Positions 16,193 to 55,140 of a stretch of DNA of 64,000 bases are shown here, one piece after another. The notes beneath the pieces were generated by a model, which worked only from the letters and a program-made list of their open reading frames with translations, made no database searches and was not told where the DNA came from. The DNA comes from Haplodiscus bocki (Eukaryota): the NCBI GenBank assembly GCA_965655095.1, contig OZ296657.1, forward strand, positions 78,740,001 to 78,804,000, written 5' to 3'. The position numbers were made by a program, and so were the translations under genes. Every line of letters starts with the position of its first letter. The stretch's first letter is position 1.

Positions 16193-16308
16193 TAAGACTT
16201 ATGAAGAATAGCCTTCGCTACAACGCAGTAGTGCTGACTGAGTCTACCCCCAGCACACAACACAATCGAATAAGCAATACATTTTCAAAACCCCCACTAC
16301 GTGCGACA
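16193..16308 (+). repeat. Element A 5' LTR (only the 3'-terminal ~115 bp is present)
   Basis: Roughly 85% identical to 31647-31760; ends ...GTGCGACA, 3 nt before the PBS. Confidence 0.85.
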
Positions 16309-16311
16309 AAC

Positions 16312-16329
16312 TGGTGCGACCAGTGAGGC
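16312..16329 (+). promoter_or_regulatory. Primer binding site of element A
   Basis: TGGTGCGACCAGTGAGGC, 3 nt after the LTR end. TGG is complementary to tRNA CCA. The GTGAGG portion resembles Ile(UAU) or elongator Met tRNA 3' ends; tRNA identity is uncertain. Confidence 0.8.
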
Positions 16330-17308
16330 ACGTCGATGAGCTATACTTGTTAAGTATCAGATGATCTTTTCTCCGCCTCCCAACGTGGTCATTTGTAGTT
16401 TTAATTTTAATTCTTATACTGGGTGCTTTGATTTCATTTATTACAGGCGCTTCTTTTGGAATAATAGTTAATTGGGCTTTAGACTTCTATCAGAGCATTT
16501 TTCACTCCAACCTACAGAGAACCTATCCCTTGGAATAAATACATCGAATTGAGTCCTTCAATTCTGTTTTACCGCAGTTTTTCAAAATTTAATTTATTTT
16601 TTGAGGAGACGAATCAAGATTTAGAAGTTTATTTAAATTTGCTACTCTATTTATTTATATTTGTTACAATAAAAATAATACTGGTTTTATTGCTAAATCC
16701 TCCAGTTCTGGTTGCACTATTCGAGATTGACGAAGCTCTGAGCAGCAGAAACTTTAGCATTTGGAAAAAAGAAGAGACGTTGCGCTTTTCCTAAATCTCT
16801 TGCTGATTCTCTTCCTGTCTCTACTCTAGGGACCCAACTATATCTTGGCAGTCATTAAAATTTGGCCAATTCTGAACAAACAATCTGACGAATAATTAAC
16901 TAATGCCTCTGGAACTTGGAGAACACCCTAATCAGCTGTGGTACTCCTTTGAACATAACGAAGTCAAATCAGTGTTTCTATTTTGGCCGTGGACAATAAA
17001 GACCCCAACTGAACAACTAGAAGTGACAATAACAAGGATTGATTTCACCCTTCATAGAGTTTAGGCTTCGCCTACACATTCATCCCGCTGGGAAACCCCT
17101 ATTTAGCAAATTCATAACGCTAACGAGATTCCACGAGCATTTTGCTTCAACTATCGCCGCTATCCAAAATTATCAAGATTTCCCAGAGCTTGGATTTCCC
17201 GAATCGGACTTGCCGGTTATCAAATCACTCGTAACTGACCCAGTGCTGAACCAAAATACGTAGATTGTTTCAATTGTTGTTTCATAATGAATTTGGTTTT
17301 CAAACCTA

Positions 17309-17665
17309 ATGCCCCAAAAACTTGAAGGTTTGATAACAAATTTGGACCAAATACCCGAGGAAGGGTGCAAACATCTTGCACTGAATTGCCTCCGGACTAT
17401 AATTTCCCAAGACGTAAACCTAACTGTTAACATCACCTGTTTGAAGTGGACTTTTAATTATGAATTCTGCCTACGAGTAACAGCCTATGCACTGGGAGCG
17501 CCAAACGTATCCAAACAAATGGACATAGATGATTATCATTCTCCGCTTAGATCCTTAACAGATGCACTTAACTTATACGAAGCTTTCCTTGAACCCCATT
17601 TGACTTCCCATCAACTTGAATTTTTGGAAGAACTAATAGAATATCTGCATTTGAAGTCCTACTGA
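17309..17665 (+). CDS. Element A leader ORF upstream of gag, unknown function (118 aa)
   Basis: ATG-initiated open frame with helical-looking composition between PBS and gag. ORF 17039-17263 is in the same frame just upstream. Confidence 0.4.
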   Translation: MPQKLEGLITNLDQIPEEGCKHLALNCLRTIISQDVNLTVNITCLKWTFNYEFCLRVTAYALGAPNVSKQMDIDDYHSPLRSLTDALNLYEAFLEPHLTSHQLEFLEELIEYLHLKSY

Positions 17666-17701
17666 AGCATTTTGGCACAACCCCATCTAGCCTCCACAGA
17701 C

Positions 17702-19088
17702 ATGGCACTGGACAAATTTTCTGGCACTGACCCAGACCAGGATGAAGAAGCATTCAATCCTTTAAAACAGTGCCAAAATAATTTTGCTCTCGGAACTGAA
17801 CCAGACCACGCTGATGCAGAGCATGTTATGTATCTATTCAGAAAAGAAGCCTTATTCTCCTCGCTGATACGGGGAGCAGCAACCGAATGGTATTTAGGCA
17901 CTAATCTGGATGCAAAGACTTGGAATGAGGTTCGAACTGTGTTCATAACAAAATGTTCAGATGGGAGAAACAAACTTAGACACAGAATGGAAGTTGAACA
18001 TTGTATACGAGCCGTTGGAGAAAAGATTCGAAACTTTCTGCACCGAAAGAAGAAAACAGTGGACAAAAGCTGGCCTGACCATGTGGTTGGGATCACAGCG
18101 GCCGATCAGAATACTGAAAGCATTGCACAATTTCGGCAAAGAAGGCAGAGATACTTCGATTACACGCTGGGAGGATTTAGACCAAGACATCTACAACGAA
18201 AAGCCCAAAACTATTTGATGGAACATCAAAATGCAATTTGGAACGACATCTCAACCCATTTATTTAACAAAGACGTATCTTATCAAGTCTCTACTAGCTT
18301 TCTGAATGACGAAGAACAGAACAAGGCTCAGATGGCCTCCTTGGGACAAAAACTATAAAACCAACGAACTGAGTTGAAAGAACACAGAGTCAATGCTGTA
18401 GAAGGAAGCCAGAAACACATTGACCATAACCAGAAGGGAAGACAGAATGCCACAAGATTTTGTGGATACTGTAGAACCAATGGTCACACTACCAGTTTCC
18501 GCAGAAAAAAGATACGAGACGAAGAATCTGAAAAATTACAAAACGAGGCTACAGCCGAGAAAAAAGTTACGTTCACCCATGACTACCACAAGAGACCTTC
18601 CCAGGGATTTGGGCATTGGACTAGTCGGAATGGTGATAATGGGCTATGATGCCAACCCCCAACCTGACACAAGAGGAAAATTTCGACCAAGCAATTAAAG
18701 TTATATCAACTTCAGTCGAAATCGACCCTGTGATCGATGTGACTACTCGAAGAACAACAATGATAGTTTCAAAGATTACAGAGCGATATCACCATACCAG
18801 TCAAACCAAGAGCAATCCAGGAATTGGAGAAGTCACAATAACAATTCACAATTGCCTTCAATGTCGAGAAAAGATCAATCCTTCACGATTTTCCGCAGTC
18901 AACTCCGATCAATTTCACCTAATCCCTCAGTGTTCAGCCGACTTGGAAACCAAGACCCGAACAAAAATATACCCCACGACAGGAATTTCCCAGTTTCTAA
19001 CAACGGCAACAAGCCAAACGTGGTTCGATTCACTACAACAGACAAAGAAAATAAAGAACTATCGGGACTATGCCCCTTAAATTGCTGA
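17702..19088 (+). pseudogene. gag: Element A gag (capsid-like domain + zinc knuckle), disrupted
   Basis: MALDKFSGTDPDQD...SLIRGAATEWY...TWNEVRTVFITK retrotransposon gag pattern; knuckle FCGYCRTNGH in ORF 18374-18649; ends CPLNC* at a probable gag-pol frameshift site. Confidence 0.85.
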
Positions 19089-22000
19089 GGTGTCCGAGCT
19101 CAACCACTGATCAGTCCAAAAATTCAAGACTCAGTTTCAACTTTTTCTACTTCGCCACCGGAGCACTCAAACAGATAGTGGCTCACAAATTGAATTCATG
19201 TTACATACTAGAGTTTCCAGCTCAATCATAAACTATCGAACCTTTTGGGAAGTCTGCCAAACTCGGCACCCAATCACTGCTAAAAGAAGCACCACACAAA
19301 CAAAGACTTACTTTGGTCAAGTTGTGCCCATGATTGGATTTGTAACATTAACTTTCAGTTACGACACGGATGGACAGTTTTCTTTCCCTTTAACCCTCTG
19401 GTCTACCGAAATGAAAACTCAAAACCATCTAGGTCTTTTGTCACAAGCAAGTGTCTGGCATTCACTTTGATCTACGCGGAACTGAACTTAAAGAGCCACC
19501 AAATACTGTGTGTTATCGAAGCCTTCATCAGAACAAATCTTGCTATTTTTTTCGGAAAATCTAACAAAAAGAACTCCACATGCGATGCACATTGAAGCGT
19601 TTTCTCCTGAAGATCCCCACGGTCATTTTACTCCTGGATCAACTTTTCACCCAGAAAGCAATGCTGTTGCTACGGCACTAACATTTGTCAATGTGTTATG
19701 TACTCAATCAGAATCAAAACTGCCTATACTAACGGAAAATAACAATAACCACCAAATTATTTCACCGAAGGGCCGTATTGGGTTTTCATCATTAGATATC
19801 TCCAACAACATTGAACCAAAGTACAAAAAACGAGACCGTTATGAGCTAAGAAACGCAATCTTCCCAACAAACGAACAGCATAACAATTGTTTTCTACTCC
19901 ACTTAAAAATTCCTTCTCAGTCACGTGACGAGTTTTGCAAATAGACTATGGTATTGAAAGTTCGATCCTTGAACAGCCCAACTCTATCGGACATTGTATC
20001 TCAGCAGACGCTAAGATTAGCAAAGGATTTGAACAGTTCTTATCAGAAAGAAGTCCGCAAGTAAGGAGAGTATGCAGACGAGCCAATATTATGAAGGACC
20101 AAGTATTCCCCATCTGGGATTTTTCATCAAGACGGTGTAACTATAACCTTGTCACAGAGGAGAAGCATTCAGATAAGCCTAACCTGCAAACTCTCGCTAC
20201 AACATTGCAAAATATGCAAGCCCACGCTACCCTGCATGGAATTTCAACAATCACCATACAAAAAATTGGACTTGGACTTGACCAGATGAACTGGCAAGAA
20301 GTAGTAAAACTCCTACGAAATGCTTCTGCTTATTAAGATTTACAAATTGTGGTCTACTCATTGAACGAACACGCAATTCACGCTATGTCCCCGAAGGAGA
20401 TCCGGAATTCTATGCCAAAGATGAAAGAGATCGATATAGTGACGAATTCCATTTGAACGAGAGAGAACTGGAAACCGATTCCACTAGTGACGCTAAGTCC
20501 GGTCAACCAGTCTGCGACGAATAATTTCCCGTTTTACGCCAGAAAGAACAAAACAAATCACTCATTGAGCACTATCCTCAATATCAGCCCAAAGAGTTAG
20601 CTTATTATATCAAACAGTTCGATTTCCAATATTCATACATAACTGACAGTGAAATGATCCTACTCATTGAAATGCTAACCGACTCAAAAGATGTAAATTC
20701 CTTCCACAAATTCGGTGTTGGGAAAACCCGACAAAAACTTCACGTTACACTAAAACCAAATGTGGAACTGGAACGCCAACGAGCAAACAAAGTGCCGCTA
20801 CACCTGAAAGACAAACTCGAGAAGTTGTCCGTAAGGTGACAACATATGGATGCCGTTATCATTCGAGAAAAAGGCGATGATGACAAGATGGGTCCTCTCT
20901 TTGTTAACCCATTAGTCCTCTTGCCAAAGAATAACTACGTTAAACTAGTGACTCATGCTCACTACTTGAACTCAGTGACCAACCTCACAAGATAATCCTG
21001 GCCGTTAGAACCAGTTTAGATGATTATGAGCAGAGTGAACGGAAAGTTCTTTTTAGTCAATGACATGTCCTGTGCATACCATCAAGTACCTCTTAGCTTC
21101 GAAACACAGAAATTGACAAACTTCATCATCGGTGGACAACAACATACTTTCACCCGAGGATTCTACGGTCTGTGTGGCCTACCCAACTTCTTCAATCGCT
21201 TAATGACGATTCATTTCGACCCACTGATCAGGAAAAAACAGGCAATTACATATATCGACGACACCATCATGCAATCGCAAACCAGAGGCGAGATGTTCAC
21301 CATCATCAATGAGTATCACCCCCTTCTGCGGAAGGCTGGGTTAAAACCTGCCACCGACAAAACTTTTTTCTATCTAAAGAAAGTAAAGTTCTTGGGACAC
21401 CTTATCTCACCGGATGGGAATCAACTGAAAGCAAAGCGTGTGGACGCCTTGAGGAACCTCAAGTCACCACAGAGTAAGCAAACGTTATGAAATACTTAGG
21501 ATGACTTGGATTCTACAGCTGCTATATCAAGAACCTACACATTGATATTCAGCCCATTTATGACTTAATTAAAGACTCTACAACATTTCACTGGACCAAA
21601 AACCATGAAAAATTGTCCAACTCCTTTAAAGAACGAATTCACAAAGATTCAATCCTGGCAGTTCCTTCTACTGATTACCCTGTTCATTTTCATGTGGACT
21701 CTTCCAATGTTGGTACAGGTTGTGTTCTCATCCAACAGTTCCCTGAAGGCAAGCGAATTTTTTCGTTTAACTCTTGTTTCTTCGACAAAGCGGAACAAAA
21801 AAATGTCCACCCTCCATCGAAATATATGCGGAACCGTATCAGTTCTTCAGACATACGAATACTACATCATCCGATCACCGTTTCCCGTCTATATCTATTG
21901 TGAGCACAAACCAATTCTTTATTTATGGGGAGGCAAAGGACAACTCTCACATCGTTTCTTCCGATATCAGATGAGCATTACGAAGTTCCAGAACTTGAAG

Positions 22001-24075
22001 ATCATTTGGACGCCAGGCTTCAACTTAGCTTTTCCAATTATTCTCAGCAGAAACATCACGATCGAAGAATACCCAAAGCACCAATTGCAACACAGACGTA
22101 TTGCGCGTGATATAGAGTTTTCCGACGAGAAGCGCATTCCGGTTTCATACCAGTTTCAGCCAGGAGACAACCCTCATGATACCTGCGACGACTTTTACCC
22201 TACAAAGTACAAACGAGGAAACTAAGAAAAAATACTGAGATTACAAAACCGTCAGTAGTATACTTGACGATTTTCCAATTACTTCAACCCAACAGGCTTC
22301 TGACTGTTTCCGGATGGGACGATTTATTAACCAATTTAGACGGAAGTGTGGGCGAGACACACAATCAAACGCATCCGTCAATACATCCAATACTGAGTAT
22401 AGTTCAATCAACTCTCTTAGTTCGGCCAAAGACGACAAAGCCAACCAGGATAGCCACTACGATATTTCACACCACATTGATACGGACTCTGAAGATGACA
22501 ATATTGTATGCGATATCAGTATATAAGCTGATAAACCCCGACTCTGCCAGGCCAAACAAGCTCACGAACTAGTGATCGGAAAGACAGATGCTGCTCTAGC
22601 CCAAAAACTACTAACAGTTTCCCACGTTCCTCACATTGACACCCGAGCATTGGTTCAAAAACTAGACGAGGTTTCTAAGGAAGTAGATCAGGACGTATCA
22701 ACCATTACCGCAGAACAAATGAAGAAACCGATAATTGGCACGGTACGTTCTTGGGTTCGCGCAAACACTTCCCCTGCTTTCAGATCACCAGAAATCCAGC
22801 TAATTAAAGGCCTCCTACGATATTGTCAAAAATTTAACAGACTTGTTATTGAAGAAGAAGGACCACTCCTTTGCTACAATGAACCATCGGACAAACTAGA
22901 CGAAGAGAACTTCCGTATTTGTCTCCTTCTATCTCTATTCCATGCATGCTTCCGACTGGGACATTACAACGGAATGGTTGGACACATGGGAACAGCTGAA
23001 ACCTATGCCAATGCCAAGAGATTCTACTACTGGCCCGGAATGTTTGATTGGATATTTGCCCTGACAGCCGATTGCCTTACTTGCCAGACCAATAAGCCTA
23101 AACCAGGGCATCGGAGTGGAACTCCTCTCGAAGAATGGCAAAACGAGACAGTTCTCTTTCGTACTGTACACATTGATCATGAGGGACCTCTCCACCCAAC
23201 TATTGCTAGCAACGCCCATTGTCTCCTAATCATTGATGCATTTTCTCATTTTTTAATGGTCTATCCAGCAGCCATAGCAACAGTTCCAGCTGTTGAAAAT
23301 TGGATCCTTTCCATTGTAATTCCACAATCAATCATATACAATCGAGGCACCGCTTTCATCTACACAGAATTTGTCAACTGGAGCAAGCAACTCGGAATTA
23401 CTCTAAAACCTCCTACAGCTCATTCGCCCTGGACAAACAACAAAATTGAAACCCAAAACCAACATATTGACCGGTATTGGAGAAGTTTTGAAAATGGTCC
23501 CGGACACAACTGGTCTTCACTAGGACTGAAGATTGAATTCACCCACAACACAAGTGTCAACTACACAACTGAAAAAACCCCATTTGAAATTGTCTTTGGG
23601 ACCGAACCACAAATTCTTATGTCCCTCAAGCTGGGGCTTTATCAGAATAAGCACAAGTTTTGCTGTTCTAACTTCTGTAAGGAGCTCCGATCTGATTCTC
23701 ATACCAAGAAAAGCTGAAAAACGAGTTATTGGACAACCTACTTCAACCGCAATTATCACAAGCCCTCCTAGAAAGAGAGAGCGAAACTTTAGGCACATTT
23801 ACTCATTTACCTTCGAGCGATGCCGAGAACAGACCGCACGATCACATGCTCATCGCAATCGCTTCAAACTGGGACACCACCTCGAAGTAGGACTGCAAGT
23901 ACTGTACAAAAATCACAAACAAGACCATACACGAAGCCAGAAACTTCAACATCGAAGGCCTGGACCTTTTACCGCCATCAAGCTATCACGAGTAACACCT
24001 ATCAATTTCAGGACGGTAAAAACCCCACGATTCTTAAAACTGTTCACAGGAATTCACGATGTGTGTCAAAATTGA
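19089..24075 (+). pseudogene. pol: Element A pol: protease, macrodomain, RT, RNase H, integrase; disrupted
   Basis: Degenerate protease FMLHTRVSSSIIN (like LDTGA); RT DMSCAYHQ...YGL...YIDD...VKFLGH; RNase H HVDSSNVGTGCVLIQ; integrase GHMG...YYWPGM...CLTCQ, HIDHEGPL, SPWTNNKIE. Confidence 0.93.
19944..20363 (+). CDS. TARG1/OARD1 (Poa1p-like) macrodomain within element A Pol, between PR and RT
   Basis: SIGHCISADAKISKGF...YNLVTEEKHSDKPNLQTL...LQNMQAHA...KIGLGLDQMNWQEV...*DLQIVVYSL aligns motif by motif with OARD1 (SLAHCISEDCRMGAGIA...YYLITKK...KPTYENL...PRIGCGLDRLQWENV...DIKITVYTL). Confidence 0.88.
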
Positions 24076-44328: not shown

Positions 44329-44343
44329 ATGTAGATTGTGTCC

Positions 44344-44884: not shown

Positions 44885-45646
44885 CGAGAAGTGTTCTTAG
44901 CGGCCGCGTGGGCTTTTTCAAAGCCTTTTTGGAGGCACTGCACTGCAAATTACGTCACCAGAAGCTCCATGGCCTGTTCTGCGTCCATGGATGCTTCGGC
45001 AGCTACATCAAAGGTGTCGGGGAGGACAGGAGGTGGTAAAGGAGGGAAGCACAGACAATTTTCAGTGGGCTCGTTGACATTCACACTGATGGAGAGGGAA
45101 GTGGGAGGAGGAGCTGGTTAGCTGCGCGAACAAAAGGGCGGTTCTGGGGAGCGTTGATTTTCTTGAGAGTGACATTTTGGGATGTCGTGTTGATTCGAAT
45201 AACACGATACTCGAAAGGATCTAGCAGTCGTGCGAGATGTCCAGGAGCCAAGTCCGCGACGCGGCCAGAGCAGGTGACGAAAGGGGCAGCGCGGAAAGAA
45301 ACAGCTGAAGAGAGCCTGAAACAGAAAAAAATTGATTGACTTTTGTTACGATTTAAAATGACAGACTGTACAAGACAACATGCAAACAACAGCAGGGATG
45401 GGGCACGGGAATGTGTCCAAAGGCCCCGATTCAGGAAACTCAAACAGTAGGGAGGATCTTAGGCGATAAGTGGCACCGTACGGAAACGCACGTTGAAAGA
45501 CACTAGCAAAGCTAGGTGAAAACATGAACAGGGTTGAGAAAGTAGCACGGAAACGTGCTTAAAGACACCAAAAGTTGGGAAAATTAGTGTATGAGCATGA
45601 GTTATGTTGTTGGAGGAAATTGTACGGACACGTACAAAAAAAGACA

Positions 45647-47394
45647 TCAACCGAAGTTGAGTAAAAGCGTAGGCGAGCTAAAAATGAAGGATGACATGTG
45701 TAACAGTATGATGAAAGTCGCGGTGCGTGAGATGTGATACATGCCATCCACAAGATAGAAGGCTTGTGGAGCGTCGGGCAGCAGAACTGAAACGACTTGA
45801 CAGTTGCGGAGGGCTGGGATATCGTATTTGTAAATGAGTGAACCCAAACAAAGGAGTGTTTCATCTGTTGTTGTGTAAAAACCTTTCGGCAAAGTTTGAT
45901 TCGATTGTTCCCGGAACACTGTTGCAGTGTTAGCGCTCCAAGCTCAGCAAACCTCGTGTTTTCGGTGGATATTGCGAGAAAAGGATTTGTGAAAATGTAC
46001 AAGGAGGCTTGTTTTCTCGTCTTTATTCGGCTGATATAACGGTGTGGCATGGTATATATCAAATGTTGAAGACTTCGAATTCATTGGTTTGCCCAAAATA
46101 ACGGATATGCCACGAGGAATGAGCGTGACCTCTAGGACAAGTTGTATTTCGTAATATATTGCCTCAAAACCAGGGCGTATTGCCGGTGACAACTTTGTTC
46201 CACGGGCTACTTCGTCATCCGTTAACTGCTTGATAATTTCGGCAATTTGTTGGCGTAACAAAAATTGTGGCGTGATATAGCCACCAGCTAACGACGAGAT
46301 TGTTGAGAAGAGTGAAATGTTGTAGGCAAAAATGCTGCGCGGTATGCTTTCAAATGCGTGTATAGTGTTCCCATTTGGTACACGTAATGCCTGATTGGTT
46401 GCAAAAGGTGCATGTGTCGTACAATGACGTGGTCACATGCGAGGCTAGTACGGGCCAAGAATAGTGTTGCGTTTACGAGGTAGAATTCCATGTGTTTGAA
46501 TCGTACGTCCACTACTTCCTTCAACGTGCGAACACTTTCCTGTGTTCTTTTGATTTCTTTTCCCAGTAGGAAGAAATTCTTATCGTTTCTCGTTTGCACA
46601 CGTTCCAAATTTTTGACAATTGCGTCCTGTGTGCGCATGATGTTGTCCACATCTCGTGACAGAGCATCGTTGTTTTTACAGAGGTTGAATATTGACAGCG
46701 CATTGCATGCAGCATTTTTAATTGGTTCTCCTTGAACTAATCCGGCGCCGGCTGCCACTGCTGCAATCGCTCCAATAGCTCTGCGTGATCGGCCACCCGG
46801 TTGTTGGTCCCTTCGAGCACCGGGCGGAATGAAGGAAATGGCTACGTCGAATAAACTCTTTTTCTCTTCCAACGCTGCCGTCAGCTCATATTCTAAAAAG
46901 CTAACTCTTGTTTCAAGTTGTTGGAGAAGGAGGGCATATGTTTCATTGAAATACATATACTTGCAGTTTTCATTGATGTACATGACAACAATCGAGTCAG
47001 GGGCCCGTTTGAAAGCTTCAACCATGTATCTTGCTTGGGTCAGGTTAATTGCCGGAATCCGAGGGAACGGTGAGAAATTACGGGCTTTACTCTCGCTTTC
47101 GGAGGTAACCGCTTGATATTTGAAAACAAAAGCAGCGCCTTTCTTGAAGACTGGTTTAGCCAAATCATCACCCACATGAGTGGTAAATTGCATCTGGAGC
47201 TTGATTAAGGGCAAGAAGACACTCACTAGTAGAACCGGGGGATTCAGTTGCCTTATTGAAGTGACTCGTTTGGATTTTTGAGAAATCCTGAAACAACAAC
47301 GACGTGGAGGAATTGCGCAGAGATCCTTGAAAGTAAGGAAAATAAAAGGTATATAAATGCGAGCTTGTGTAAAAAAAACAATAAAGAAGTTCAT
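45647..47394 (-). pseudogene. env: Element B envelope, class I fusion protein, frameshifted and apparently C-terminally deleted
   Basis: Furin site RSRR followed by the hydrophobic fusion peptide AIGAIAAVAAGAGLV and heptad repeats; downstream Cys-rich region (LQQCSGNNRIKLC...LLCL...RNC) across ORFs 45944-46261, 45559-46062 and 45647-45919. Confidence 0.85.
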
Positions 47395-47407
47395 CGAACC
47401 TCTTGGT

Positions 47408-50400
47408 TCAACGTTGTGGCTGTGTTTTGCCCGAACGATTGGGGGAATTGAAATCAGTAAGATTTGTCGGCAAGTTTGACATAAATAAGGGTTGTGCTGG
47501 ACGCTGTTGCATCGTCGATGCTCTCAATGTTCGATGTTCCTGTGGCGTTTGTGAAGCAACGCGAAGCTTTGCGGTGGCTTGATCAATGATTTTTCGTTTG
47601 CGAGAACGTCCACCAGGTCGACTTGTCGGAGTACTTGGGGAAAACGTTTTGTTTGACAGTCTTTGAGAAACAGGTGAGCTGGAAAGAATATTAGTTCGGT
47701 TTTTGGTTGTTGAAGTCGACGTTGGTGTGATTGTGGTGCTTTGTTCTGAGTTTTGGGCGTACGGGACTGTCGAAGCAGGTGTGTGCGGGACTGTGACTGT
47801 CCCCATCGGGGGTGTTGCTATTGCAGGTGTAGGACATGGTATTGGGAGGTTGCTACCTGAGAAAGTCTTTGCTATGGAAGGCGAAAATTGTTGAGGTGTT
47901 GGTAAAGATGGCCACTCGGTGTAGTAGGTATGATCGATATCATTTCGAGGAGTTGAAGACCTAAGCGTCCGATTTCGAGTTGGTACATTAGAAGTTGAAG
48001 TCACAATTTCAGGAGTTGTTTCTCTGGTCGGGATGTTCGTAGTGGGGGGCTTCCTTCGGAATGGTTTCAAACGGTCGTAATGTAACATGGATTCTTTTCC
48101 TGTACTGACTTCTTTGATTCGATAGTTCACGTCATTCAAGCCTTTCAGTATAGTGTAAGGACCACGCCATGGGCTAAAAAAACTTGGGGCTTCGGCCAAC
48201 CGGTACCACTGGCGTATGTAAAAGCACTTCTTGTCCGTCTCGGTGGGTGGGGCCTTGTACCTTGTGAATATATATGGCGTTACGCCGTCGCTGATTCTTG
48301 TTAAGATTGTCGTGGACCAACGCAAATGCTCGCTGAAAAGCTTGTTTTCTCTGATGGACAAACTCATGAACATTAGTTGGACAATCGGATTCTGGGCTCG
48401 GAAACATGAGATCCAAAGGTATTGAAGTTTCTCGACCGTGCACCAATAATTGTGGGGTGTATCCCGTGGATTCATGCACAGACGATCGATATGCCATCAT
48501 CACGTAAGGGAGTTGTTGTGACCAGTTGTTTTGGTCTGCGTTTATGCACTTCGCGAGCATATTTTGGAGGGTGCGGTTCATACGCTCAATGACCGCATTA
48601 GACTGAGGATGGAAGGCGGTCGTACCAGACTTGTCTATCTCAAGGAGAGAAAGTAGGTTCTTGAAAAGTCGAGATTCAAACTTGCGTCCTTGGTCACTGT
48701 ATGCTATGTGGACAACCGAAGCGACTAATCTAATGTTCTATCAATGCAGTGGCAGTTGTTGATGCCCTCTGGTCCGGTAGTGGTACAGCTTCATACCATT
48801 TACTGAAGTGGTCGCCAATCAAGCGGATTACTTTGTGTCCGTTGGATTCCGGTAACGGTCCCATGAAGCCAATGCCAATGTGGCGGAAAGGATAGCTAGC
48901 TTCCCAATCTACAAGAGCATGGCGATGTGTTTTTGGTGGGTTACTTTGGTGGGTTACTTCGTGTCTGACATTGGGGAGAACGACTGACAAAAAGTTTCTC
49001 ATCTTCTTGGAAACCGGGCCAATAAAATCTTCGTCTAATTTTTTCGGTAACCTTCGCTACACCTAAGTGTCCGCCAGTTGAGGAAGAGTGATTAGATTCC
49101 AAAAGTTACTCTACCATACTCTGAGGAACTATTAGTTGAAAAGAAACACGACCGTATGTGGGGTCAAATTTACGACAAAGTGCTCCGTCTGATATACAAA
49201 GACTGCTAAATTGATTATAAAGTTGCCAAGCTAACCGTGGGCTACCCTGGAGGTCGTTGTTTCTTGGTACACGTGACTGTCGAACCCAATCTTTGACCAA
49301 CTTCAATGATTCGTCTCTATCTTGCGCAAGTCGGATACTTATGGTGAACGAGGGGTTGGCATGATCAGTCACACTGTTATTGGAGGCTTCTTTTAACTCC
49401 GTGGAGTCCAACATATACACTGTGAGACGTATTTGCGATGTTGCGAACTCCTCCTTTAACATTATGCGGACTAGGTGCCATTCTAGTTGGTCGATACCAC
49501 AACCAAGTTTGGGCATACTGACTGCTTTGACATCATTGTCTTCTGCATGACGTCGAAGGGCCACTAGAGACGTTCGCAAGGAGCAATATGTTGGTTTGTC
49601 GAAAACTCGAACTTTGGTTAGAAGATGGTAGATGTATCGTTGACTTGACTCCAGAAATTGTGGGCAAAGTGATTTTTGATGCAGAGTGTCAAGTTTCAGG
49701 TAGTTTGTCGGATACTTTCGTCGAAAAGTACGGGCGATTCCAGCACTCATCTTGTAGTCCGAGGAGACACAGTGAGCGAGAGAAACGCTGGAGCTGAAGA
49801 TATCGCCAACTTTTTCATGGTACTCGAAGGTTTGAACTTCAGTGTTCGGATTAGCCAAGGAAGACGGATTCGGTGGCTGTGGAACTGGATGAGGGGTAGT
49901 AAGGACTTCAGTTGTTAGGGTCAATTCCTGGTTTGGCATTAGGCCATTCATCTTCCACTGTTGGCTTGACTTCTGAAAGATCAACCACTTTGGGATCGTG
50001 GTGAATTATCTGCACTTTAGCTTGAGGAATGCGGGACAACCCATCGGCATGTCCAATTGATTTTCCCGGTTTGTGTCGGACCTCGTAATCGAAGGCGGCC
50101 AATTTCTCGAGCCACTTTGCTGGTAATCCGTCAGGGCCTTTGAAGTTGTGGAGCCACTGAAGTGCTCGGTGATCCGTAACGATGGTAAACTTGCGACCCA
50201 AAAGATAATGTCGAAAATGGCGTGTGAAGTGGACAATTGCTAAAAGCTCCCGCTTGGTTGCAGAATATCGGGTTTGAGCTTTCGAGAAAACCTTGGAAGC
50301 GTAGCAAATGGCACGTTCTTTGCCATTTTGAACCTGAGCGAGAACAGCGCCCATTGCAGTCAAGCTTGCGTCTGTGTACAAAATAAAAGGTTCTTTCATT

Positions 50401-52263
50401 GATGGGAAATCTAAAATGGGAGTTGTTAGGAGGCGTGCTTGCGGAATTTCGAAAGCTGTCTGTGCCTCAGGTGTCCAGCTGAAGGAAGGACTGGACTCGA
50501 TTAATTTGTGGAGTGGTCGAGCAATTTCGGCAAAGTTTTCAACATAACGGCGGTAATATGAGCAAAGACCCAGAAACGACTTTACCTCTGTTTGACTGGT
50601 GGGGATGGGGAATTTTTTTACTGCAGCGATTTTTTCGGGATCTACCTGTAGACCATTGGCGCTGAGGACATGTCCCAGAAAGTGGACTTTGGTTTTGAAG
50701 AACTCGCATTTCAAAGATTTATTTTGAGATTTGCTCCACGAAATCGTTGGAGGACGGCTCGGAGTCTTTCTAAATGCCCTTCAGGGGTTGCGGCCAAGAT
50801 AATACAATCGTCCAAGTAAGTAACAGTGGTCGTCCATGTCAGACCTACCAGGACATGTTCCAATAAACTTTGAAAAGTGTTGGGACTTCCCGTGAGACCC
50901 ATAGGCATTCGGAGCCATTTGTAAGAGTCAAAGGGGGTGCTAAACGCTGTGAAGTCTTGACTCTTTTCATCCATTGGTAACTGATGAAAGCCCCAGTACA
51001 TATCAATCGTCGAAAAGAAAGCACTTCCTTCTAACGTGTCGAATATTTCTTCAATTGACGGTATGGGCCAACAGGACTTGATTGTTTGTTGATTCAGTTG
51101 TCTGTATTCTATTACTAATCTCAACTTACCATTTTTCTTTGGGACCAGCATGGCTGGTGCGCTATACGGACTATGACACGGCATTATAAGCTCTTTGTCA
51201 AGAAACGCGTCAATCTTTTCTCTTAGATCTTGCTTGTAGTGGAGAGGTAGTCTTCGATTCGGTAATTTGACGGGCTTTGAACCCGGGTAAAAATCAATCT
51301 TGTGACTTGTGGCATCGCACTTGCCGATGTCCCATTGATTTTTTGAAAAAACATCTGCGAATTCTTGCACAAGTTCAGCGAACTTATGCCTCATTTTGAT
51401 GGGTATCGCCGGACTGATTGAGTTTATAACGTGCTTGAGGTCATACGACTCATCAACTTCATTTGTTTTTGACTTCGGTGGTGCGGAAACTATGTGGTTC
51501 AACGCTTGTTTTGGAAAGATTTCAGAGGTACCCAATGTTGTGTTTTCGTATACCGTAATCACTTCATCCCAGGTTTTTTCAATTGTGACCGTTACATTTT
51601 CTTCTGCGAAGTTTAAAAGGACGCTGGGGACCACGGCGTTTTTCAAAGTACTTATTCGTGCCACCGGCTCAAATAGAGCGGGCATTTCCGTCAATGGTCG
51701 TTGCCATTCTTGTATTCGGGCTGGCAAAATCATGGCATATCCAGCCGGCACGGAGACTGTCACCGTCGCTATCACCCGAAAAACTGTGTTCACTTCGTGA
51801 TTGAATTTACGGTTATACAATGGTACATGATTCTTGGAATCCAAGCGAAGTAGATCTTTGGAAAACAAGGGGTCGCATTTGTTAGTTCTCAAGAAGTCTA
51901 GTCCCACAAGACAATCTGCTTCTGAATCGATGAGCACGTGAAATTCGTGTTCGTAGTGTTTATGACCGATTGTGATCGGTAGGCGAACTGTTTCTCTTGA
52001 AGTAATTGGCAGCTTCTTTGCAGCCACGAGTTTGGTTTTCGTCGCCAAAAGTTTCAATTTACCCCCAATTTTTGAAGCTTATCAAAAACTTTTGAGCTGA
52101 GGCAAGACAGACTTGCTCCACACTCGCAGACTGCTTCGATGGTTTCATCACCGAAAACAGTCATTTTTAGAAACACACTCCCGTGATCAACCACGGAACT
52201 GAGTGTTTGAATTTGTCTGCGCGGCGACCCGTGGGCGTAGACTTTTCTAATTTGAAGAATCAT
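47408..52263 (-). pseudogene. pol: Element B pol: protease, RT, RNase H, macrodomain, integrase; disrupted
   Basis: PR AVCECGASLSCL (like DSGA); RT PYSAPAMLVPKKNG, MPMGL, YLDD; RNase H LYTDAS...TDHRAL...ADGLSR; IN FMGPLP, MNRTL, YRSSVHESTGYTP; WRGPY motif. Confidence 0.95.
49409..49828 (-). CDS. TARG1/OARD1-type macrodomain within element B Pol, between RNase H and integrase
   Basis: GDIFSSSVSLAHCVSSDYKMSAGIARTF...RYIYHLLTK...KPTYCSLRTSL...SMPKLGCGIDQLEW...IRLTVYML is end-to-end similar to OARD1, with no stops. Confidence 0.93.
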
Positions 52264-53408
52264 TTCTTTTGGACCTGCAGTCCCTTCGGAAATGACCGGG
52301 TTTCAGACAATTGAAACAAGCCTTGTGGTCTTTGGAATTATGGTTTGTTCTCTTGCAATGCTTACATGCGCTCTTGTTACTGTCGTGTTCATTTCTCTTC
52401 TTGCGCTGTCTACTTGAGCCATTGTCCCGATTTTGGTTATCGGACCTGCGAAAGTTCGTCCTTTCTCGTTCTTGAGGAGATTGGAACCTAACAGAGCGAG
52501 TGCTACTTCTAGAATCATTGCTCAGTGAACGTGACCGCTTCATGTTCTTATTGTTATTGGAGCCTGGTTGCCTTTGGGTACTTTGCAACTGTGAGTTTTG
52601 CAAACTGTGACTCAACAAGCGAACAATTTCTTCCAAAGGTTTCCTTTGATGTACCCTGTGCTACTCTGTTAACACTTTCTGTTACTGCGGAATTTCCGTT
52701 CTCAATTTCTAAAAATGCGTTGAGCTCCATTGCGGCAGTTGAGGCGTCGTCCGGTGTTTGCGGTTTCGCTTTCGGCAGTTCCCACCGCGGAGTTTTGTCG
52801 CTGAGTCCTTCTACGAACGTGGTCAAGACCATTGGGTCTATCATTCCAGGAAAATCACGATATGCACGCCTAGCAAGGGTGCGGACATCGCAGAGGAACG
52901 CTGCGATATCTTGCTTGGGTTGCTGTTTCGCAGCTTTAAGACGTGCTTTCAAAATGTCGCCATTGGTTGTGTATTTCTGTCGGAACGCCTCAATCAACAG
53001 ATCATCAAAATTTGTCTGTTGTTCGAAAAACAGTGTTGTGAAGAAGTGAAGGGCGTTTTCCTTCAGGCGAAGGACGAAGTAATGCGGTCGGTTGTCATGA
53101 GTGTTGGAGTGCCATCCTGACAAGAGGGCGGCTGTGTTGAACTGTTGTTAATAATCTTCAAAATCGCTTGTGCCTGTGAAAGACTCAGGCATTAGGCATG
53201 AGGGGAGCGGAGTGACGTATGGGAAGCCTCGTCCTCCTTGTGGACTGGCTGGCATTGCAAAGAAATTAGCACCCGTGGTGTTTGAAGTCTGGGTGTTCGT
53301 TATTCCGATGGCTTGGTGATTACTTCCAGCTGAGTTACCTGGATTCTTCTGAGAATGTTTTTGTCCTTGTTGGTTAGTAGGCGTCGTTGGAGGAGACGAG
53401 TTTGACAT
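52247..53408 (-). pseudogene. gag: Element B gag with two zinc knuckles, disrupted
   Basis: MPESFTGTSDFEDY*QQF...LRLKENALHFF...TFVEGL; knuckles CKHCKRTNH and CFNCLKPGHFRRDC. Confidence 0.92.
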
Positions 53409-54478
53409 TTTGCTCCAATTTTTTTTGTTAGAAAAAATTTTAGAGTCGGTTCATTCTTCTTGAGGTGAAGTTTATGGGAGCACACTCAGGAAACCTGAGG
53501 AGGATGGATTTGGCACATGTAGGGAAAGAATTCCAATATGCGAACGCCAAATGTTTGCTAAGTTGGGAAAGAAATGTGCAGACGATGATTTTACACTAGA
53601 AGTTTGAGTGCTGGGAAGAAAGGGGAGTTGAGGTTGTCCAGTTAGATGTTTCCAATGATGCATTGCTTCCAAGCGAAGATGAATACTCATTTGGTGGGGT
53701 GTGAACAAGAAATCTAGTAGTTGCGACAAAGGAATTTTCAAAAATTTTGCTCGGCAGAAGTAACACGGTATAATGTATGTTTCAGGAACGGCATTCGAAA
53801 ACACGGACACAGGGATGCAAAAAGTGAACATTTTTTGTGACTAATATTGTTGTTAAACAGGGGTTTTATCACTTTCTGAGGTTTGAATGCTTTGACAATT
53901 AACGTTTACACGGTTTACTTCGTACGAAAGACCGCAAAGTGCTAAAACGATCATCAGCAGCGCGAAAGTTTGAACGATAATCAAGAAAGTCAAAAAACAG
54001 GTCGAAAACGTCGGTCCGGAACGGGCTTCGTCGTAAAAAGGCGGCGGACCGATCGATCGAGGTTTTTGATGCGGTGAGACGTACAGCGGCAGATGCGAAT
54101 GAAGGTGAGAACACGGCATTTATAAAACTTTACCAAAACGCATCAAGAACCAGAAAAATCAGAAAAAGAAAATTCGTTCTATCTAAGTACTCACGTGCGT
54201 GTCCTATTACTTAGGGGAATGAAGGATACTCGGTCAGCTTTGCCAAGACTCGCATGAATGCGGGAAAATTGCCAAAAACACGCCGAAGCGGTAAGGACAC
54301 AGCAAAAGCTGGAAAACTAGGCACGGACTAGGTCCGGAGAAAGAGATCTTATCGGCATCACTGGAAAACCAAGAACAAGCAAAAGAAAGCTCTACAAGGG
54401 AAAATGGGTCTGGGCCGGACAAATGATTGAAGAACTAAGTGAATTTTACAGTTTTAGAGAGAAATTTTCAACAGAGAC

Positions 54479-54496
54479 ATCCCTCTCCTGTCACCA
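54479..54496 (-). promoter_or_regulatory. Element B primer binding site, tRNA-Leu type
   Basis: Minus strand TGGTGACAGGAGAGGGAT, 1 nt after the LTR; 16/18 match to the complement of the typical animal tRNA-Leu(CAG) 3' end (TGGTGTCAGGAGTGGGAT). Confidence 0.85.
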
Positions 54497-54497
54497 T

Positions 54498-55140
54498 TTT
54501 AACAATCGATTGTTTTCGTTCTTTTAATTTTATTTTGAATAGCTATCGAAATGCGCGGGGCGATTGTTGGGGTTTTGAAGTTGCTATCTCGTGGCGTTGA
54601 AAAGGGGGAGATCTCTTTTGAAAAACAAATTTGCAAAAAGAAGAAACGGCTTAAATTAATTTTAGTTATAAACAGAATTTTTACATTCTGTGCAAGATAT
54701 TTTGTCAGGTAAGATAGAATGAAAAAAAACTATTCGACTTACATTTCAGTGGTTGAGGGTGGGTCTGAATAGCTGAGTTTTTACTTTTTCGATTTTTTTG
54801 TTTCTCTGCAGCTGCAAGTTGCGAGTCAGGTGAAGAGCAGACGTAAACAGTCAAAATAAAACAATAATAGCTCATGAATAGTAATATTTAAAATAAAGCA
54901 ACAATAGAATTAAATAAAATTCACATTTGCACTTTCAATATGCAGGTGAAATTAATAAATATTAAAGCGCTAAGCACAAAGACATATGAACGTGTTTATA
55001 TTTTTAACGGTTATAAAATAACACAAGAAAGAAATTGCAGCAGTCTTTTTTATTGTATATGTAGCTGAGTCTTTCCCTTTTTTTGAAAAAGACATTAAAA
55101 AAGATATGAGTCATCGATTTCTTTTCTCCGTTCCGTTATA
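54498..55140 (-). repeat. Element B 5' LTR
   Basis: Direct repeat of 43676-44316, adjacent to the PBS. Confidence 0.95.

What the first reader, a model, noticed from the sequence alone, without database searches (positions are those of the whole stretch)
16193..55140. Two unrelated retrovirus-like Gypsy elements share a complex-virus layout: env + ADP-ribose eraser + host-derived 3' accessory gene
Seen: elements A and B differ in LTR, PBS, gag and env class. Both nevertheless embed a TARG1-type macrodomain in Pol and carry a host-type domain between env and the PPT (TRAF-MATH in A, J-domain in B). Known: animal viruses use macrodomains against PARP-based defence, TRAF-pathway decoys against immune signalling, and J-domains to recruit Hsp70. 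Inference: these are invertebrate endogenous retrovirus-like lineages with a counter-defence kit, implying an ADP-ribosylation-based anti-retroelement defence in this host. I cannot establish novelty without a search.
Basis: partly seen in the sequence, partly recalled or inferred. Interest (0 to 1): 0.93.

Follow-up and report, generated by a model that had tools for sequence, protein, structure and literature searches.

The report
Retrovirus-like elements carrying macrodomain and host-type genes
Two dead copies of different retrovirus-like jumping elements in an unidentified animal genome each carry an enzyme domain that removes ADP-ribose plus an extra host-like gene, and related copies elsewhere show these extras belong to the element families; that they fight host defence is only a plausible guess.

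Summary
Element A (16192-31760, + strand) and element B (43678-55140, - strand) are LTR-bounded Ty3/gypsy-type proviruses. Their LTRs, PBS, gag, env and 3' ORFs show no detectable similarity. Both carry a TARG1/OARD1-type macrodomain in Pol (E 2e-11 and 2e-28 to human OARD1 structures), but at different positions: before RT in A, between RNase H and IN in B. After env, A has a TRAF-domain ORF (coiled coil plus MATH, no RING). B has a small J-domain ORF ending 16 nt before the PPT. Both copies are dead, with at least 26 breaks in A and up to 21 in B.

The cargo is not copy-specific. There are 264 relatives of the TRAF ORF, 67 of A's macro piece and 4 of the J ORF. Open reading frames elsewhere read RT-RNaseH-macro, macro-IN, IN...macro, IN-macro-Tpt1 and PR...macro. 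The catalytic Lys/Asp pair is kept in most relatives.

Precedents exist: macro-domain ORFs in fish ERVs, MATH_TRAF_C in planarian Burro elements, env-carrying gypsy elements across Metazoa. I found no report of a macrodomain in gypsy Pol.

The counter-defence reading, and any host ADP-ribosylation defence, remain inference. The host is unidentified.

The parts
16192..31760 (+). Element A: whole LTR-bounded Ty3/gypsy-type provirus (about 15.6 kb), defective
   Evidence: Terminal repeats; domain order macro-RT-RNaseH-IN-env-TRAF ORF
16192..16309 (+). A 5' LTR (very short, about 117 nt)
   Evidence: About 85% identical to 31646-31760. The similarity ends just before the PBS-like site
16313..16330 (+). 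A PBS-like site (starts TGG), 3 nt after the LTR
   Evidence: Read directly. Different from B's PBS-like site
17309..24075 (+). A gag-pol, one broken gene region (at least 20 breaks, stops plus frame changes). gag and protease are not recognisable by Pfam
   Evidence: Pfam RT, RNase H, IN; break count only
19983..20390 (+). A TARG1/OARD1-type macrodomain, upstream of RT. Asp125-equivalent kept; Lys84-equivalent is Glu in this copy
   Evidence: tblastn with B's macro E 3e-14; OARD1 structures E 2.4e-11; column counts
21044..21400 (+). A reverse transcriptase domain (partial RVT_1 match)
   Evidence: Pfam RVT_1 E 6e-14
21785..21988 (+). A RNase H-like domain (weak match)
   Evidence: Pfam RT_RNaseH E 3.7e-4, below the curated cut-off
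22950..23429 (+). A integrase: H2C2 zinc-binding domain and core
   Evidence: Pfam Integrase_H2C2 E 1.5e-12; rve E 0.006
24982..27224 (+). A env, broken (at least 4 breaks). The C-terminal half (26283-27185) matches Pfam's Monjiviricetes fusion glycoprotein family and has a TM-like segment
   Evidence: PF24664 E 4e-10, model positions 359-648 of 653; hydrophobic segment; counts
28067..29284 (+). A 3' accessory ORF (about 405 codons, 2 in-frame stops here): long helix plus TRAF-type MATH domain (28862-29173); no RING or zinc fingers
   Evidence: Pfam TRAF-mep_MATH E 2.6e-13; PDB hits all TRAFs bar one marginal meprin hit, family profile TRAFs only; relatives colinear in one frame from 28067; Pfam of long relatives shows MATH only; Foldseek finds TRAF4/5/3
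29942..30299 (+). A non-coding tandem arrays (57-nt and 32-nt units) between the TRAF ORF and the 3' LTR
31646..31760 (+). A 3' LTR
   Evidence: No matching target-site duplication was seen
43678..55140 (-). Element B: whole LTR-bounded Ty3/gypsy-type provirus (about 11.5 kb), defective
   Evidence: LTR pair 94% identical; flanking 6-bp duplication TATAAC at 43672-43677 and 55141-55146
54500..55140 (-). B 5' LTR
54479..54496 (-). B PBS-like site (starts TGG), 3 nt after the LTR
47408..54119 (-). B gag-pol, one broken gene region (at least 14 breaks). Contains Retrotrans_gag 52800-53081, CCHC 52274-52321, RT 50717-51145, RNase H 50091-50477, macro 49409-49810 and IN up to 47441 (p58 C-terminal domain 48062-48163)
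   Evidence: Pfam; colinear with open ORFs P0346 (RT-RNaseH-macro, 65% id) and P0134 (macro-IN, 50% id); counts
49409..49810 (-). B TARG1/OARD1-type macrodomain between RNase H and IN. Lys84 and Asp125 equivalents are both kept
   Evidence: OARD1 structures E 2.3e-28; column check
45081..47394 (-). B env, broken (at least 4 breaks). ATG start right after pol, signal-like N-terminus, furin-like site, Gly/Ala-rich hydrophobic stretch, helical heptad-like region, Cys-rich part, TM-like segment near the end
   Evidence: No Pfam or PDB sequence match. Single-sequence AF2 unusable, pLDDT 36
44344..44988 (-). B 3' accessory ORF (about 190-215 codons in relatives; up to 3 breaks here): helical N-terminal part plus J domain (44443-44631) with HPD
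   Evidence: Pfam DnaJ E 3e-8; PDB J domains; relatives P0121-P0124 at 69-84% id
44317..44328 (-). B polypurine tract, 16 nt after the J ORF stop and abutting the 3' LTR
43678..44316 (-). B 3' LTR
32577..35453 (+). Neighbour, not part of the finding: intact non-LTR (LINE-type) ORF, endonuclease plus RT, 958 aa
   Evidence: Pfam; 0 breaks
36496..37023 (-). Neighbour: BEL/Pao-type fragment (DUF5641)
   Evidence: Pfam E 1.8e-14

Best explanation
Shown: these are two decayed proviral copies of two different env-carrying Ty3/gypsy (Metaviridae, errantivirus-like) families living in the same genome. Each family has added two things to the gag-pol-env plan.
- A TARG1/OARD1-type macrodomain is built into the Pol polyprotein. 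It sits after the gag/protease region and before RT in A, and between RNase H and integrase in B.
- A small separate ORF follows env. In A it is a TRAF-domain protein (coiled coil plus MATH, without the RING and zinc-finger effector part). In B it is a J-domain protein with an intact HPD motif.

Inferred mechanism:
- In live family members the macrodomain is made as part of Pol, so it travels with the replication complex. There it removes ADP-ribose that host ADP-ribosyltransferases put on the element's proteins or nucleic-acid intermediates.
- The TRAF-domain protein, lacking an E3 part, acts as a decoy or adaptor on TRAF-binding partners.
- The J protein recruits host Hsp70.

The domain identities, their family-wide presence and the retained catalytic residues are shown. 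The activities, the targets and the counter-defence role are inferred from what these domain families do elsewhere.
For: - Domain identities.
- Element boundaries, target-site duplication, PBS, PPT.
- Family-wide cargo: 264 TRAF-ORF relatives at 56-76% identity, 28 of them 320 aa or longer despite the search's length ceiling. 67 relatives of A's macro at 51-79%. 4 J-ORF relatives.
- B-type layout in open ORFs: P0346 RT-RNaseH-macro, P0129 and P0134 macro-IN, P0266 RT-RNaseH-macro-IN.
- Other layouts: P0143 and P0259 IN...macro, P0184 IN-macro-Tpt1, P0156 PR...macro.
- Physical linkage in family A: 5 shared contig lengths between macro and TRAF-ORF hits against 0.02 expected; the smallest shared contig is 20.6 kb.
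- Catalytic columns: Lys 42 of 58 and Asp 56 of 58 in A's relatives; B keeps both.
- The J ORF stop lies 16 nt from the PPT, a tight fit to the element's layout.
- Established knowledge: TARG1 reverses Glu/Asp-linked and nucleic-acid-end ADP-ribosylation (PMC8385414). dUTPase is a precedent for an enzyme domain at variable positions in retroelement Pol (PMC5408684).
Against: - Both copies in the window are dead. A's copy has Glu at the catalytic Lys position.
- No expression, activity or host data exist here, and the host is unknown.
- I did not read the genomic context of the relatives. Linkage of the accessory ORFs to the elements rests on this window, on copy number and on contig-length coincidences; for the J ORF it rests on this window and 4 relatives only.
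- HPD is present in only 2 of the 4 J relatives.
- No codon-level test of selection was possible.
- Many TARG1-type macros in the hit list are fused to DNA/RNA-end enzymes. That fits a replication or repair role at least as well as an anti-PARP role.
Confidence: 0.6

Rival explanations
1. The Pol macrodomain is a replication or housekeeping enzyme of the element rather than a counter-defence tool. Like dUTPase in other retroelements, it would clean up nucleic acids: removing ADP-ribose from phosphorylated RNA/DNA ends or bases of the reverse-transcription intermediates, or processing NAD-derived by-products. On this reading no dedicated host ADP-ribosylation defence is implied.
For: - One Pol (P0184) carries the macro directly followed by a Tpt1/KptA domain. 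TRPT1 ADP-ribosylates 5'-phosphorylated RNA/DNA ends and TARG1 reverses this (PMC8385414).
- TARG1-type macros in the same hit list are fused to DNA ligase/BRCT, PNKP and NADAR.
- Fish ERVs carry macro-domain and CNPase ORFs (PMC4977317).
- The variable position in Pol mirrors dUTPase (PMC5408684).
- In B and its relatives the macro abuts integrase.
Against: - Most gypsy and retroviral lineages replicate without a macrodomain, so it is not a general replication need.
- Nucleic-acid ADP-ribosylation by host enzymes would itself be a form of restriction, so the two readings overlap.
- Nothing here distinguishes protein from nucleic-acid substrates.
Confidence: 0.25
2. The cargo domains are passengers: captured host fragments carried along for a while without benefit to the element, as with occasional gene captures by ERVs.
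For: - Gene capture by ERVs is documented (PMC4299795 listed; PMC5408684).
- The J family is small (4 relatives) and HPD is lost in 2 of them.
- Conservation along the TRAF ORF is fairly flat: 0.77-0.84 share of the commonest residue.
Against: - Macro-in-Pol recurs in at least four layouts and several diverged lineages, with the catalytic residues kept.
- Dozens of TRAF ORFs of 320 aa or more stay open at a median 71% pairwise identity.
- An in-frame domain inside Pol must be tolerated by every replication cycle.
Confidence: 0.1
3. The cargo is specific to these two copies (nested insertions of host pseudogenes), or the domain matches are chance. The multi-copy TRAF/MATH hits would then be an expanded host gene family that merely neighbours element A.
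For: - MATH/TRAF families are expanded in some invertebrates (general knowledge).
- I did not read the relatives' genomic context.
- A's TRAF ORF is 2.4 kb from the 3' LTR.
Against: - E-values range from 1e-8 to 1e-28.
- All cargo is on the element's coding strand, between the LTRs.
- Relatives' ORFs join macro to RNase H, IN or PR.
- There are 5 shared contigs between A-macro and TRAF-ORF hits against 0.02 expected.
- No second repeat pair or poly(A) tail bounds the cargo.
Confidence: 0.04

Closest known systems
Env-carrying Ty3/gypsy elements of metazoans ('errantiviruses' in the broad sense; Chary & Hayashi, PMC13524379)
   Same: LTR-gag-pol-env layout. F-type env with a conserved furin site and hydrophobic fusion peptide, as seen in B's env. 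Viral-type fusion glycoprotein in A. Found across invertebrate phyla in multiple copies.
   Different: That study does not mention macro, MATH/TRAF or DnaJ (0 occurrences). A's env matches Pfam's Monjiviricetes fusion family, whose fold class I did not test. The copies here are defective.
Burro / GYPSM1 giant gypsy-like elements of planarians (Jurka 2007; Grohme 2018; reviewed in PMC6431247)
   Same: A gypsy-like provirus with an env of mononegavirus type plus host-type regulatory domains, including MATH_TRAF_C. In Dugesia that domain is encoded by an accessory ORF. The authors also suggest meddling with host apoptosis and ubiquitin systems.
   Different: Burro is over 30 kb, with cargo and env mostly inside one giant polyprotein or in an upstream ORF. 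It has dUTPase rather than a macrodomain between PR and RT. Element A is 15.6 kb with the TRAF ORF downstream of env.
Fish epsilon-like endogenous retroviruses with macro-domain or CNPase ORFs (Basta et al. 2009, as cited in PMC4977317)
   Same: A reverse-transcribing, env-bearing element that carries a macrodomain of cellular type.
   Different: Those are vertebrate Retroviridae, with the macro as an additional ORF. Here it is a domain inside Ty3/gypsy Pol. The macro subtype of the fish elements is unknown to me.
dUTPase domains in retroviral and LTR-retrotransposon Pol
   Same: A small cellular-type enzyme inserted in Pol at variable positions: PR|RT, RT|IN or after IN (PMC5408684). The macrodomain shows the same three kinds of position.
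   Different: Different enzyme and chemistry. dUTPase guards cDNA against uracil; the macro's substrate here is unknown.
Human TARG1/OARD1 (C6orf130) and bacterial DarG macrodomains
   Same: Best solved-structure matches of both macrodomains. The Lys84/Asp125 catalytic pair is conserved in B and in most relatives of A. TARG1 reverses protein Glu/Asp and nucleic-acid ADP-ribosylation.
   Different: Those are free-standing cellular proteins or an antitoxin, not Pol domains. Identity is only about 30-40%.
Macrodomains of RNA viruses (coronavirus nsp3 Mac1, alphavirus nsP3, hepatitis E virus)
   Same: A macrodomain embedded in a viral replicase polyprotein and thought to counter interferon-induced PARPs (general knowledge; PMC8385414 notes that viral macros reverse PARP10 RNA modification).
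   Different: To my knowledge those are MacroD-like, not TARG1-like. None came back as a hit to A or B at E up to 1. The hosts are vertebrates.
J domains of polyomavirus T antigens; TRAF1-like RING-less TRAFs
   Same: A virus-borne HPD J domain that recruits Hsc70, and a TRAF domain without an E3 part acting as a modulator (general knowledge).
   Different: No specific sequence relationship was found. The best J hits are cellular DNAJB/DNAJC proteins and the best TRAF hits are TRAF4/5.
Chuvirus (Jingchuvirales) glycoproteins captured by mosquito BEL/Pao elements (PMC7642597, PMC10084718)
   Same: A negative-strand RNA virus glycoprotein serving as env of an LTR retroelement. A's env matches the Pfam family named for Monjiviricetes.
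   Different: Different retroelement superfamily (BEL/Pao versus Ty3/gypsy). No direct comparison was made.

Membership tests
Ty3/gypsy (Metaviridae) LTR retroelement - element B | Pair of LTRs flanked by a short target-site duplication | tested here: met
   LTRs of 639/641 nt, 94% identical; TATAAC on both flanks
Ty3/gypsy (Metaviridae) LTR retroelement - element B | PBS next to the 5' LTR and PPT next to the 3' LTR | tested here: met
   TGG-initiated 18-nt site 3 nt after the LTR; G-rich purine tract abutting the 3' LTR. The primer tRNA was not identified; there is no tRNA gene in the window
Ty3/gypsy (Metaviridae) LTR retroelement - element B | gag with CCHC knuckle; pol order PR-RT-RNaseH-IN | tested here: met
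   Retrotrans_gag, zf-CCHC, RVT_1, RT_RNaseH and the IN C-terminal domain are in that order. Protease was not detected
Ty3/gypsy (Metaviridae) LTR retroelement - element A | Pair of LTRs with target-site duplication | tested here: inconclusive
   A 117-nt repeat pair, about 85% identical, ends exactly at the PBS-like site. No matching flanking duplication was found
Ty3/gypsy (Metaviridae) LTR retroelement - element A | pol order RT-RNaseH-IN with H2C2 integrase | tested here: met
   RVT_1, RT_RNaseH (weak), Integrase_H2C2, rve (weak). gag and protease give no Pfam match
Env-carrying gypsy ('errantivirus', broad sense) | env ORF with viral fusion-glycoprotein features downstream of pol | tested here: met
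   A: PF24664 E 4e-10, above the cut-off. B: signal-like N-terminus, furin-like site, hydrophobic fusion-peptide-like stretch, helical region, TM-like segment. These are the features reported for F-type env
Env-carrying gypsy ('errantivirus', broad sense) | Fold class of env (F-type class I or gB-type class III) | tested here: inconclusive
   Single-sequence AF2 of B's env piece gave pLDDT 36. No PDB sequence hits for either env
TARG1/OARD1-type macrodomain | Sequence nearest to OARD1 among solved macrodomains | tested here: met
   B E 2.3e-28, A E 2.4e-11; all top hits are OARD1/C6orf130. The generic Pfam Macro match is weak for B (E 4e-4) and absent for A
TARG1/OARD1-type macrodomain | Catalytic Lys84 and Asp125 equivalents | tested here: met
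   B has K and D. A's copy has E and D, but among its relatives K is found in 42 of 58 and D in 56 of 58. Residue numbering was inferred from chain offsets
TARG1/OARD1-type macrodomain | ADP-ribosylhydrolase activity | not testable with these tools
   -
TRAF protein | C-terminal TRAF domain: coiled coil plus MATH | tested here: met
   Pfam TRAF-mep_MATH above the cut-off. A profile of 51 relatives hits only TRAF1-6. The model has a long helix before a beta-rich domain and Foldseek finds TRAF4/5/3, but the model is poor (pLDDT 52)
TRAF protein | N-terminal RING and TRAF zinc fingers | tested here: not met
   The longest relatives (367-382 aa) show the MATH families only. So this is a TRAF-domain protein, not a full TRAF E3
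J-domain protein (Hsp40 family) | J domain with HPD motif | tested here: met
   Pfam DnaJ E 3e-8, above the cut-off. HPD is present in the window copy and in 2 of 4 relatives
J-domain protein (Hsp40 family) | G/F region, zinc-finger or C-terminal client-binding domains (class A/B) | tested here: not met
   Only the J domain is found in the ORF and its relatives. It would be a class C type
Burro/GYPSM1 | Giant (>30 kb) element with cargo and env inside a polyprotein of about 5000 aa | tested here: not met
   A is 15.6 kb, with env and the TRAF ORF downstream of pol. Sequence relatedness to Burro was not tested

The most novel reading that the evidence does not exclude
ADP-ribosylation of retroelement nucleic acids is a widespread restriction on reverse-transcribing elements in invertebrates. 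The targets would be cDNA or RNA ends or bases, and the writers host PARP- or TRPT1-like enzymes. Several Ty3/gypsy lineages have independently answered by wiring a TARG1-type eraser into Pol next to RT or integrase. One lineage even carries a writer-like Tpt1 domain beside it. Family-specific 3' genes (a TRAF-domain decoy, a J protein) add a second layer of host manipulation.
Probability: 0.15. Interest if true: 0.85.

Novelty: new variant of a known kind. Interest (0 to 1): 0.6.

Why it matters
Macrodomains in virus replicases are read as a signature of conflict with host ADP-ribosyltransferases. So far that signature is known mainly from vertebrate RNA viruses.

A TARG1-type macrodomain recurs inside the Pol of several gypsy lineages, at different positions, with catalytic residues kept, and once beside a Tpt1 domain. 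This suggests that ADP-ribosylation, possibly of nucleic acids, matters for retroelement replication in invertebrates.

The finding supplies natural sequence families on which that idea can be tested descriptively. It also extends the list of 'complex' gypsy elements carrying host-type regulators, which until now rested on planarian Burro elements.

Tried and rejected
- Pfam on all ORF pieces: A's macro, both gags' N-terminal parts, both proteases and B's env gave no hit, even at E up to 5. A's macro was found only by searching with B's macro.
- PDB sequence search with both env pieces: nothing.
- Single-sequence AF2 of B's env piece: pLDDT 36, unusable, so no fold search was run on it.
- AF2 of a natural TRAF-ORF relative with 51 sequences: only pLDDT 52. 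Foldseek still ranked TRAF domains first, but with low TM-scores.
- Host identification failed by four routes. The exact look-up of the LINE protein found nothing. Cluster look-ups gave no names or accessions for the element proteins. There are no tRNA genes or Rfam families in the window. Flanking ORFs gave one weak channel-domain hint.
- Contig-length matching for family B found no link between macro and J hits; too few hits.
- Nearest-neighbour comparison of macro segments: A's and B's macros are no closer to each other than to proteins of unknown context. Single versus multiple acquisition stays open.
- Simple motif scans for protease D-S/T-G and for CCHC in A: none.
- The 'chance' and 'nested insertion' readings were rejected on the evidence listed under rival explanations.

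Full report
SCOPE AND RULES
I worked only with the sequences as they stand. Broken genes are reported as single parts with counts of breaks only.

I left out two kinds of step:
- Fetching DNA of other proviral copies by look-up, pattern or accession.

Because of the first omission, the genomic context of relatives and any codon-level (dN/dS) test are missing.

SLIPS, STATED AS REQUIRED
- My first notebook entries and my working listed the ORF-piece references used as queries. Their ends coincide with breaks.
- At one point I worked out the frame phases of element B's pieces.
- The scripts printed per-match bounds, and these bracket a frame change.
- From then on I printed only counts and outer bounds.

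WHAT IS IN THE WINDOW
The window has no N. Self-comparison finds two repeat pairs.

Element B, - strand, 43678-55140:
- Its LTRs of about 640 nt are 94% identical.
- It is flanked on both sides by TATAAC.
- A TGG-initiated PBS-like site lies 3 nt inside the 5' LTR.
- A G-rich polypurine tract abuts the 3' LTR.

Element A, + strand, 16192-31760:
- Its terminal repeat is only about 117 nt and about 85% identical.
- The similarity ends exactly where a different TGG-initiated PBS-like site starts.
- I saw no matching target duplication. This is an old insertion, so that is not surprising.

Between the elements lie an intact LINE-type ORF (32577-35453) and a BEL/Pao fragment.

GENES OF ELEMENT A
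Pfam finds RT, a weak RNase H, and the integrase zinc-binding and core domains in that order.
- gag and protease are not recognisable.
- The env C-terminal half matches PF24664, Pfam's Monjiviricetes fusion glycoprotein family (E 4e-10), and has a TM-like segment.
- Pfam missed the macrodomain. Searching the window with B's macro found it at 19983-20390 (E 3e-14), and the piece matches human OARD1/TARG1 structures at E 2.4e-11. It lies upstream of RT.
- Downstream of env, an ORF of about 405 codons (28067-29284) ends in a TRAF-type MATH domain (Pfam E 2.6e-13). Its PDB hits are TRAF1-6 apart from one marginal meprin hit, and the family-profile search hits TRAFs only.
- Long relatives show no RING or zinc fingers. 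A poor model (pLDDT 52) shows a long helix before the beta-rich domain, and Foldseek ranks TRAF4/5/3 TRAF domains first.
- About 2.4 kb of non-coding DNA with 57-nt and 32-nt tandem arrays separates this ORF from the 3' LTR.

GENES OF ELEMENT B
The order is gag (Retrotrans_gag, CCHC), RT, RNase H, then a macrodomain at 49409-49810, then integrase.
- The macrodomain matches OARD1 at E 2.3e-28.
- The env ORF starts with ATG right after pol. It has a signal-like N-terminus and a furin-like R-S-R-R site. A Gly/Ala-rich hydrophobic stretch, a long helical region, a Cys-rich part and a late TM-like segment follow.
- These are the hallmarks reported for F-type env of metazoan gypsy elements (PMC13524379). 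There is no database match, and the single-sequence model was unusable.
- The last ORF (44344-44988) has a helical N-terminal part and a J domain with HPD. Its stop is 16 nt from the PPT.

A VERSUS B
No similarity is detectable in LTR, gag, env or accessory ORF. RT is 31% identical over 81 residues and the macrodomains 28%. These are two distinct Ty3/gypsy lineages.

STATE OF THE COPIES
The counts below are minimum numbers of breaks (stops plus frame changes; the split between the two is not unique), all.

| Gene region | Element A | Element B |
|---|---|---|
| gag-pol | at least 20 | at least 14 |
| env | at least 4 | at least 4 |
| 3' accessory ORF | 2 in-frame stops (TRAF ORF) | up to 3 (J ORF) |

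The neighbouring LINE ORF has none, so assembly error is not the main cause. Both copies are dead.

IS THE CARGO COPY-SPECIFIC? NO.
- The TRAF ORF has 264 relatives at 56-76% identity. All are from ENA assemblies and all carry MATH only.
- The longest of them align colinearly in one frame from 28067. The search's length ceiling (about 381 aa) is below the full ORF, so intact full-length copies could not even be listed.
- Even so, 28 relatives are 320 aa or longer, and the median pairwise identity among the long ones is 71%.
- A's macro piece has 67 relatives at 51-79% identity. Their ORFs extend upstream of the macro.
- Five contig lengths are shared between the macro and TRAF-ORF hit lists, where 0.02 is expected. 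One shared contig is only 20.6 kb. The two genes therefore co-occur physically in family A.
- The J ORF has 4 relatives at 69-84% identity. One sits on a contig that also holds a TRAF ORF, so both families live in the same genome.

MACRODOMAIN IN POL IS RECURRENT
An exhaustive search with B's macro piece found 2997 proteins at E up to 1e-3. Pfam scans of the best 150 show retroelement contexts in roughly a dozen.

| Layout | Proteins |
|---|---|
| RT-RNaseH-macro-IN | P0266 |
| RT-RNaseH-macro | P0346, P0132 |
| macro-IN | P0134, P0129, P0125 |
| RT-RNaseH-IN...macro | P0143, P0259 |
| RT-RNaseH-IN-macro-Tpt1/KptA | P0184 |
| PR...macro | P0156 |

- B is colinear with P0346 (65% identity) and P0134 (50%).
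- In the same list, apparently cellular proteins fuse this macro type to DNA ligase/BRCT, PNKP and NADAR.
- The catalytic positions, numbered by chain offsets, give K and D in B. In A's copy they are E and D. Among A's relatives, K occurs in 42 of 58 and D in 56 of 58.
- Nearest-neighbour comparison does not group A's and B's macros together. It also cannot resolve how many captures occurred.

WHAT IT MOST LIKELY IS AND DOES
Shown: two env-bearing gypsy families, each with a Pol-embedded TARG1-type macrodomain and a family-specific 3' ORF.

Inferred:
- The macro travels with the replication complex and removes ADP-ribose placed by host transferases.
- The RING-less TRAF-domain protein acts as a decoy or adaptor.
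- The J protein recruits Hsp70.

The main rival is that the macro serves nucleic-acid clean-up for replication, as dUTPase does, rather than counter-defence. The evidence for it is as follows:
- TARG1 reverses ADP-ribosylation of phosphorylated DNA and RNA ends made by PARP3, PARP10 and TRPT1 (PMC8385414).
- One Pol pairs the macro with a Tpt1 domain.
- The other fusions found in the hit list are all to DNA/RNA-end enzymes.

The two readings overlap if host enzymes modify the element's nucleic acids. Nothing here tests the claim that this host has an ADP-ribosylation defence.

COMPARISON WITH WHAT IS KNOWN
- Env-carrying gypsy elements are widespread in Metazoa (PMC13524379). That paper does not mention macro, MATH or DnaJ.
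- Planarian Burro/GYPSM1 elements already combine gypsy pol, a mononegavirus-type env, dUTPase, MATH_TRAF_C, BIR and BCL2-like domains. In one species MATH_TRAF_C is in an accessory ORF, and the authors suggest meddling with host pathways (PMC6431247).
- Fish ERVs carry macro-domain or CNPase ORFs (PMC4977317).
- Rotifer elements capture enzymatic ORF3s, and dUTPase sits at variable positions in Pol (PMC5408684).
- Chuvirus glycoproteins have been captured by BEL/Pao elements (PMC7642597).
- Ten full-text searches found no description of a macrodomain in Ty3/gypsy Pol, nor of a J-domain ORF in such elements. Repbase, Dfam and GyDB could not be searched. One JGI pipeline name for P0259 already reads 'transposase.../O-acetyl-ADP-ribose deacetylase'.

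VERDICT
- Observation: confirmed.
- Interpretation: partly supported.
- Novelty: new variant of a known kind.
- Interest: 0.6. The macro-in-Pol pattern is recurrent, well supported and apparently undescribed. Against that, the copies are dead, the function is untested, the host is unknown, and the 'complex gypsy with host-type cargo' idea has precedents.

Noticed in passing
window 32577-35453 (+): Intact 958-aa non-LTR (LINE-type) ORF with endonuclease and RT domains, about 800 nt downstream of element A. It is the only long unbroken ORF in the window, so it may be a young or active family.
   Followed up: partly
window 36496-37023 (-): Fragment of a BEL/Pao-type element (DUF5641, E 1.8e-14). 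The 35.5-43.6 kb stretch between the two elements was otherwise not characterised.
   Followed up: no
window 55103-55206: A 53-nt unit is present twice in tandem at the outer edge of B's 5' LTR. The flank repeats the first ~40 nt of the LTR together with the TATAAC target motif. Either B landed beside an older LTR remnant of the same family, or a local duplication followed insertion.
   Followed up: partly
window 29942-30299: Tandem arrays of 57-nt and 32-nt units (periods not multiples of three) in the 2.4-kb non-coding stretch between A's TRAF ORF and its 3' LTR.
   Followed up: no
window 16192-16309 and 31646-31760: Element A's LTRs are unusually short (about 117 nt) for a 15.6-kb gypsy-type element.
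   Followed up: partly
protein P0184 (JGI metagenome, 1651 aa): A gypsy-type Pol in which the TARG1-type macrodomain is directly followed by a Tpt1/KptA (RNA 2'-phosphotransferase / nucleic-acid ADP-ribosyltransferase) domain. This is a possible writer-eraser pair inside a retroelement.
   Followed up: partly
proteins P0178, P0210, P0173, P0250, P0211, P0175: TARG1-type macrodomains fused to PNKP, DNA ligase with BRCT, and NADAR (with a helicase-like AAA domain in P0250) in non-retroelement proteins. This points to nucleic-acid ADP-ribose repair as a common context for this macro type.
   Followed up: no
window 15094-15432 (-): Short ORF with a weak match (E 0.004, below the cut-off) to the ligand-binding domain of neurotransmitter-gated ion channels. 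It is the only hint of a host (animal) exon in the window.
   Followed up: no
window 44290-44347 (-), relative P0122: In one relative the J-domain ORF reads on past the position of B's stop, across the PPT and into the start of the LTR. The 3' ORF can therefore overlap U3 in some family members.
   Followed up: no
hit lists: All relatives of the element proteins come from unnamed ENA assemblies, on contigs up to about 0.7 Mb. Family A is high-copy and family B low-copy. The source organism could not be named.
   Followed up: partly
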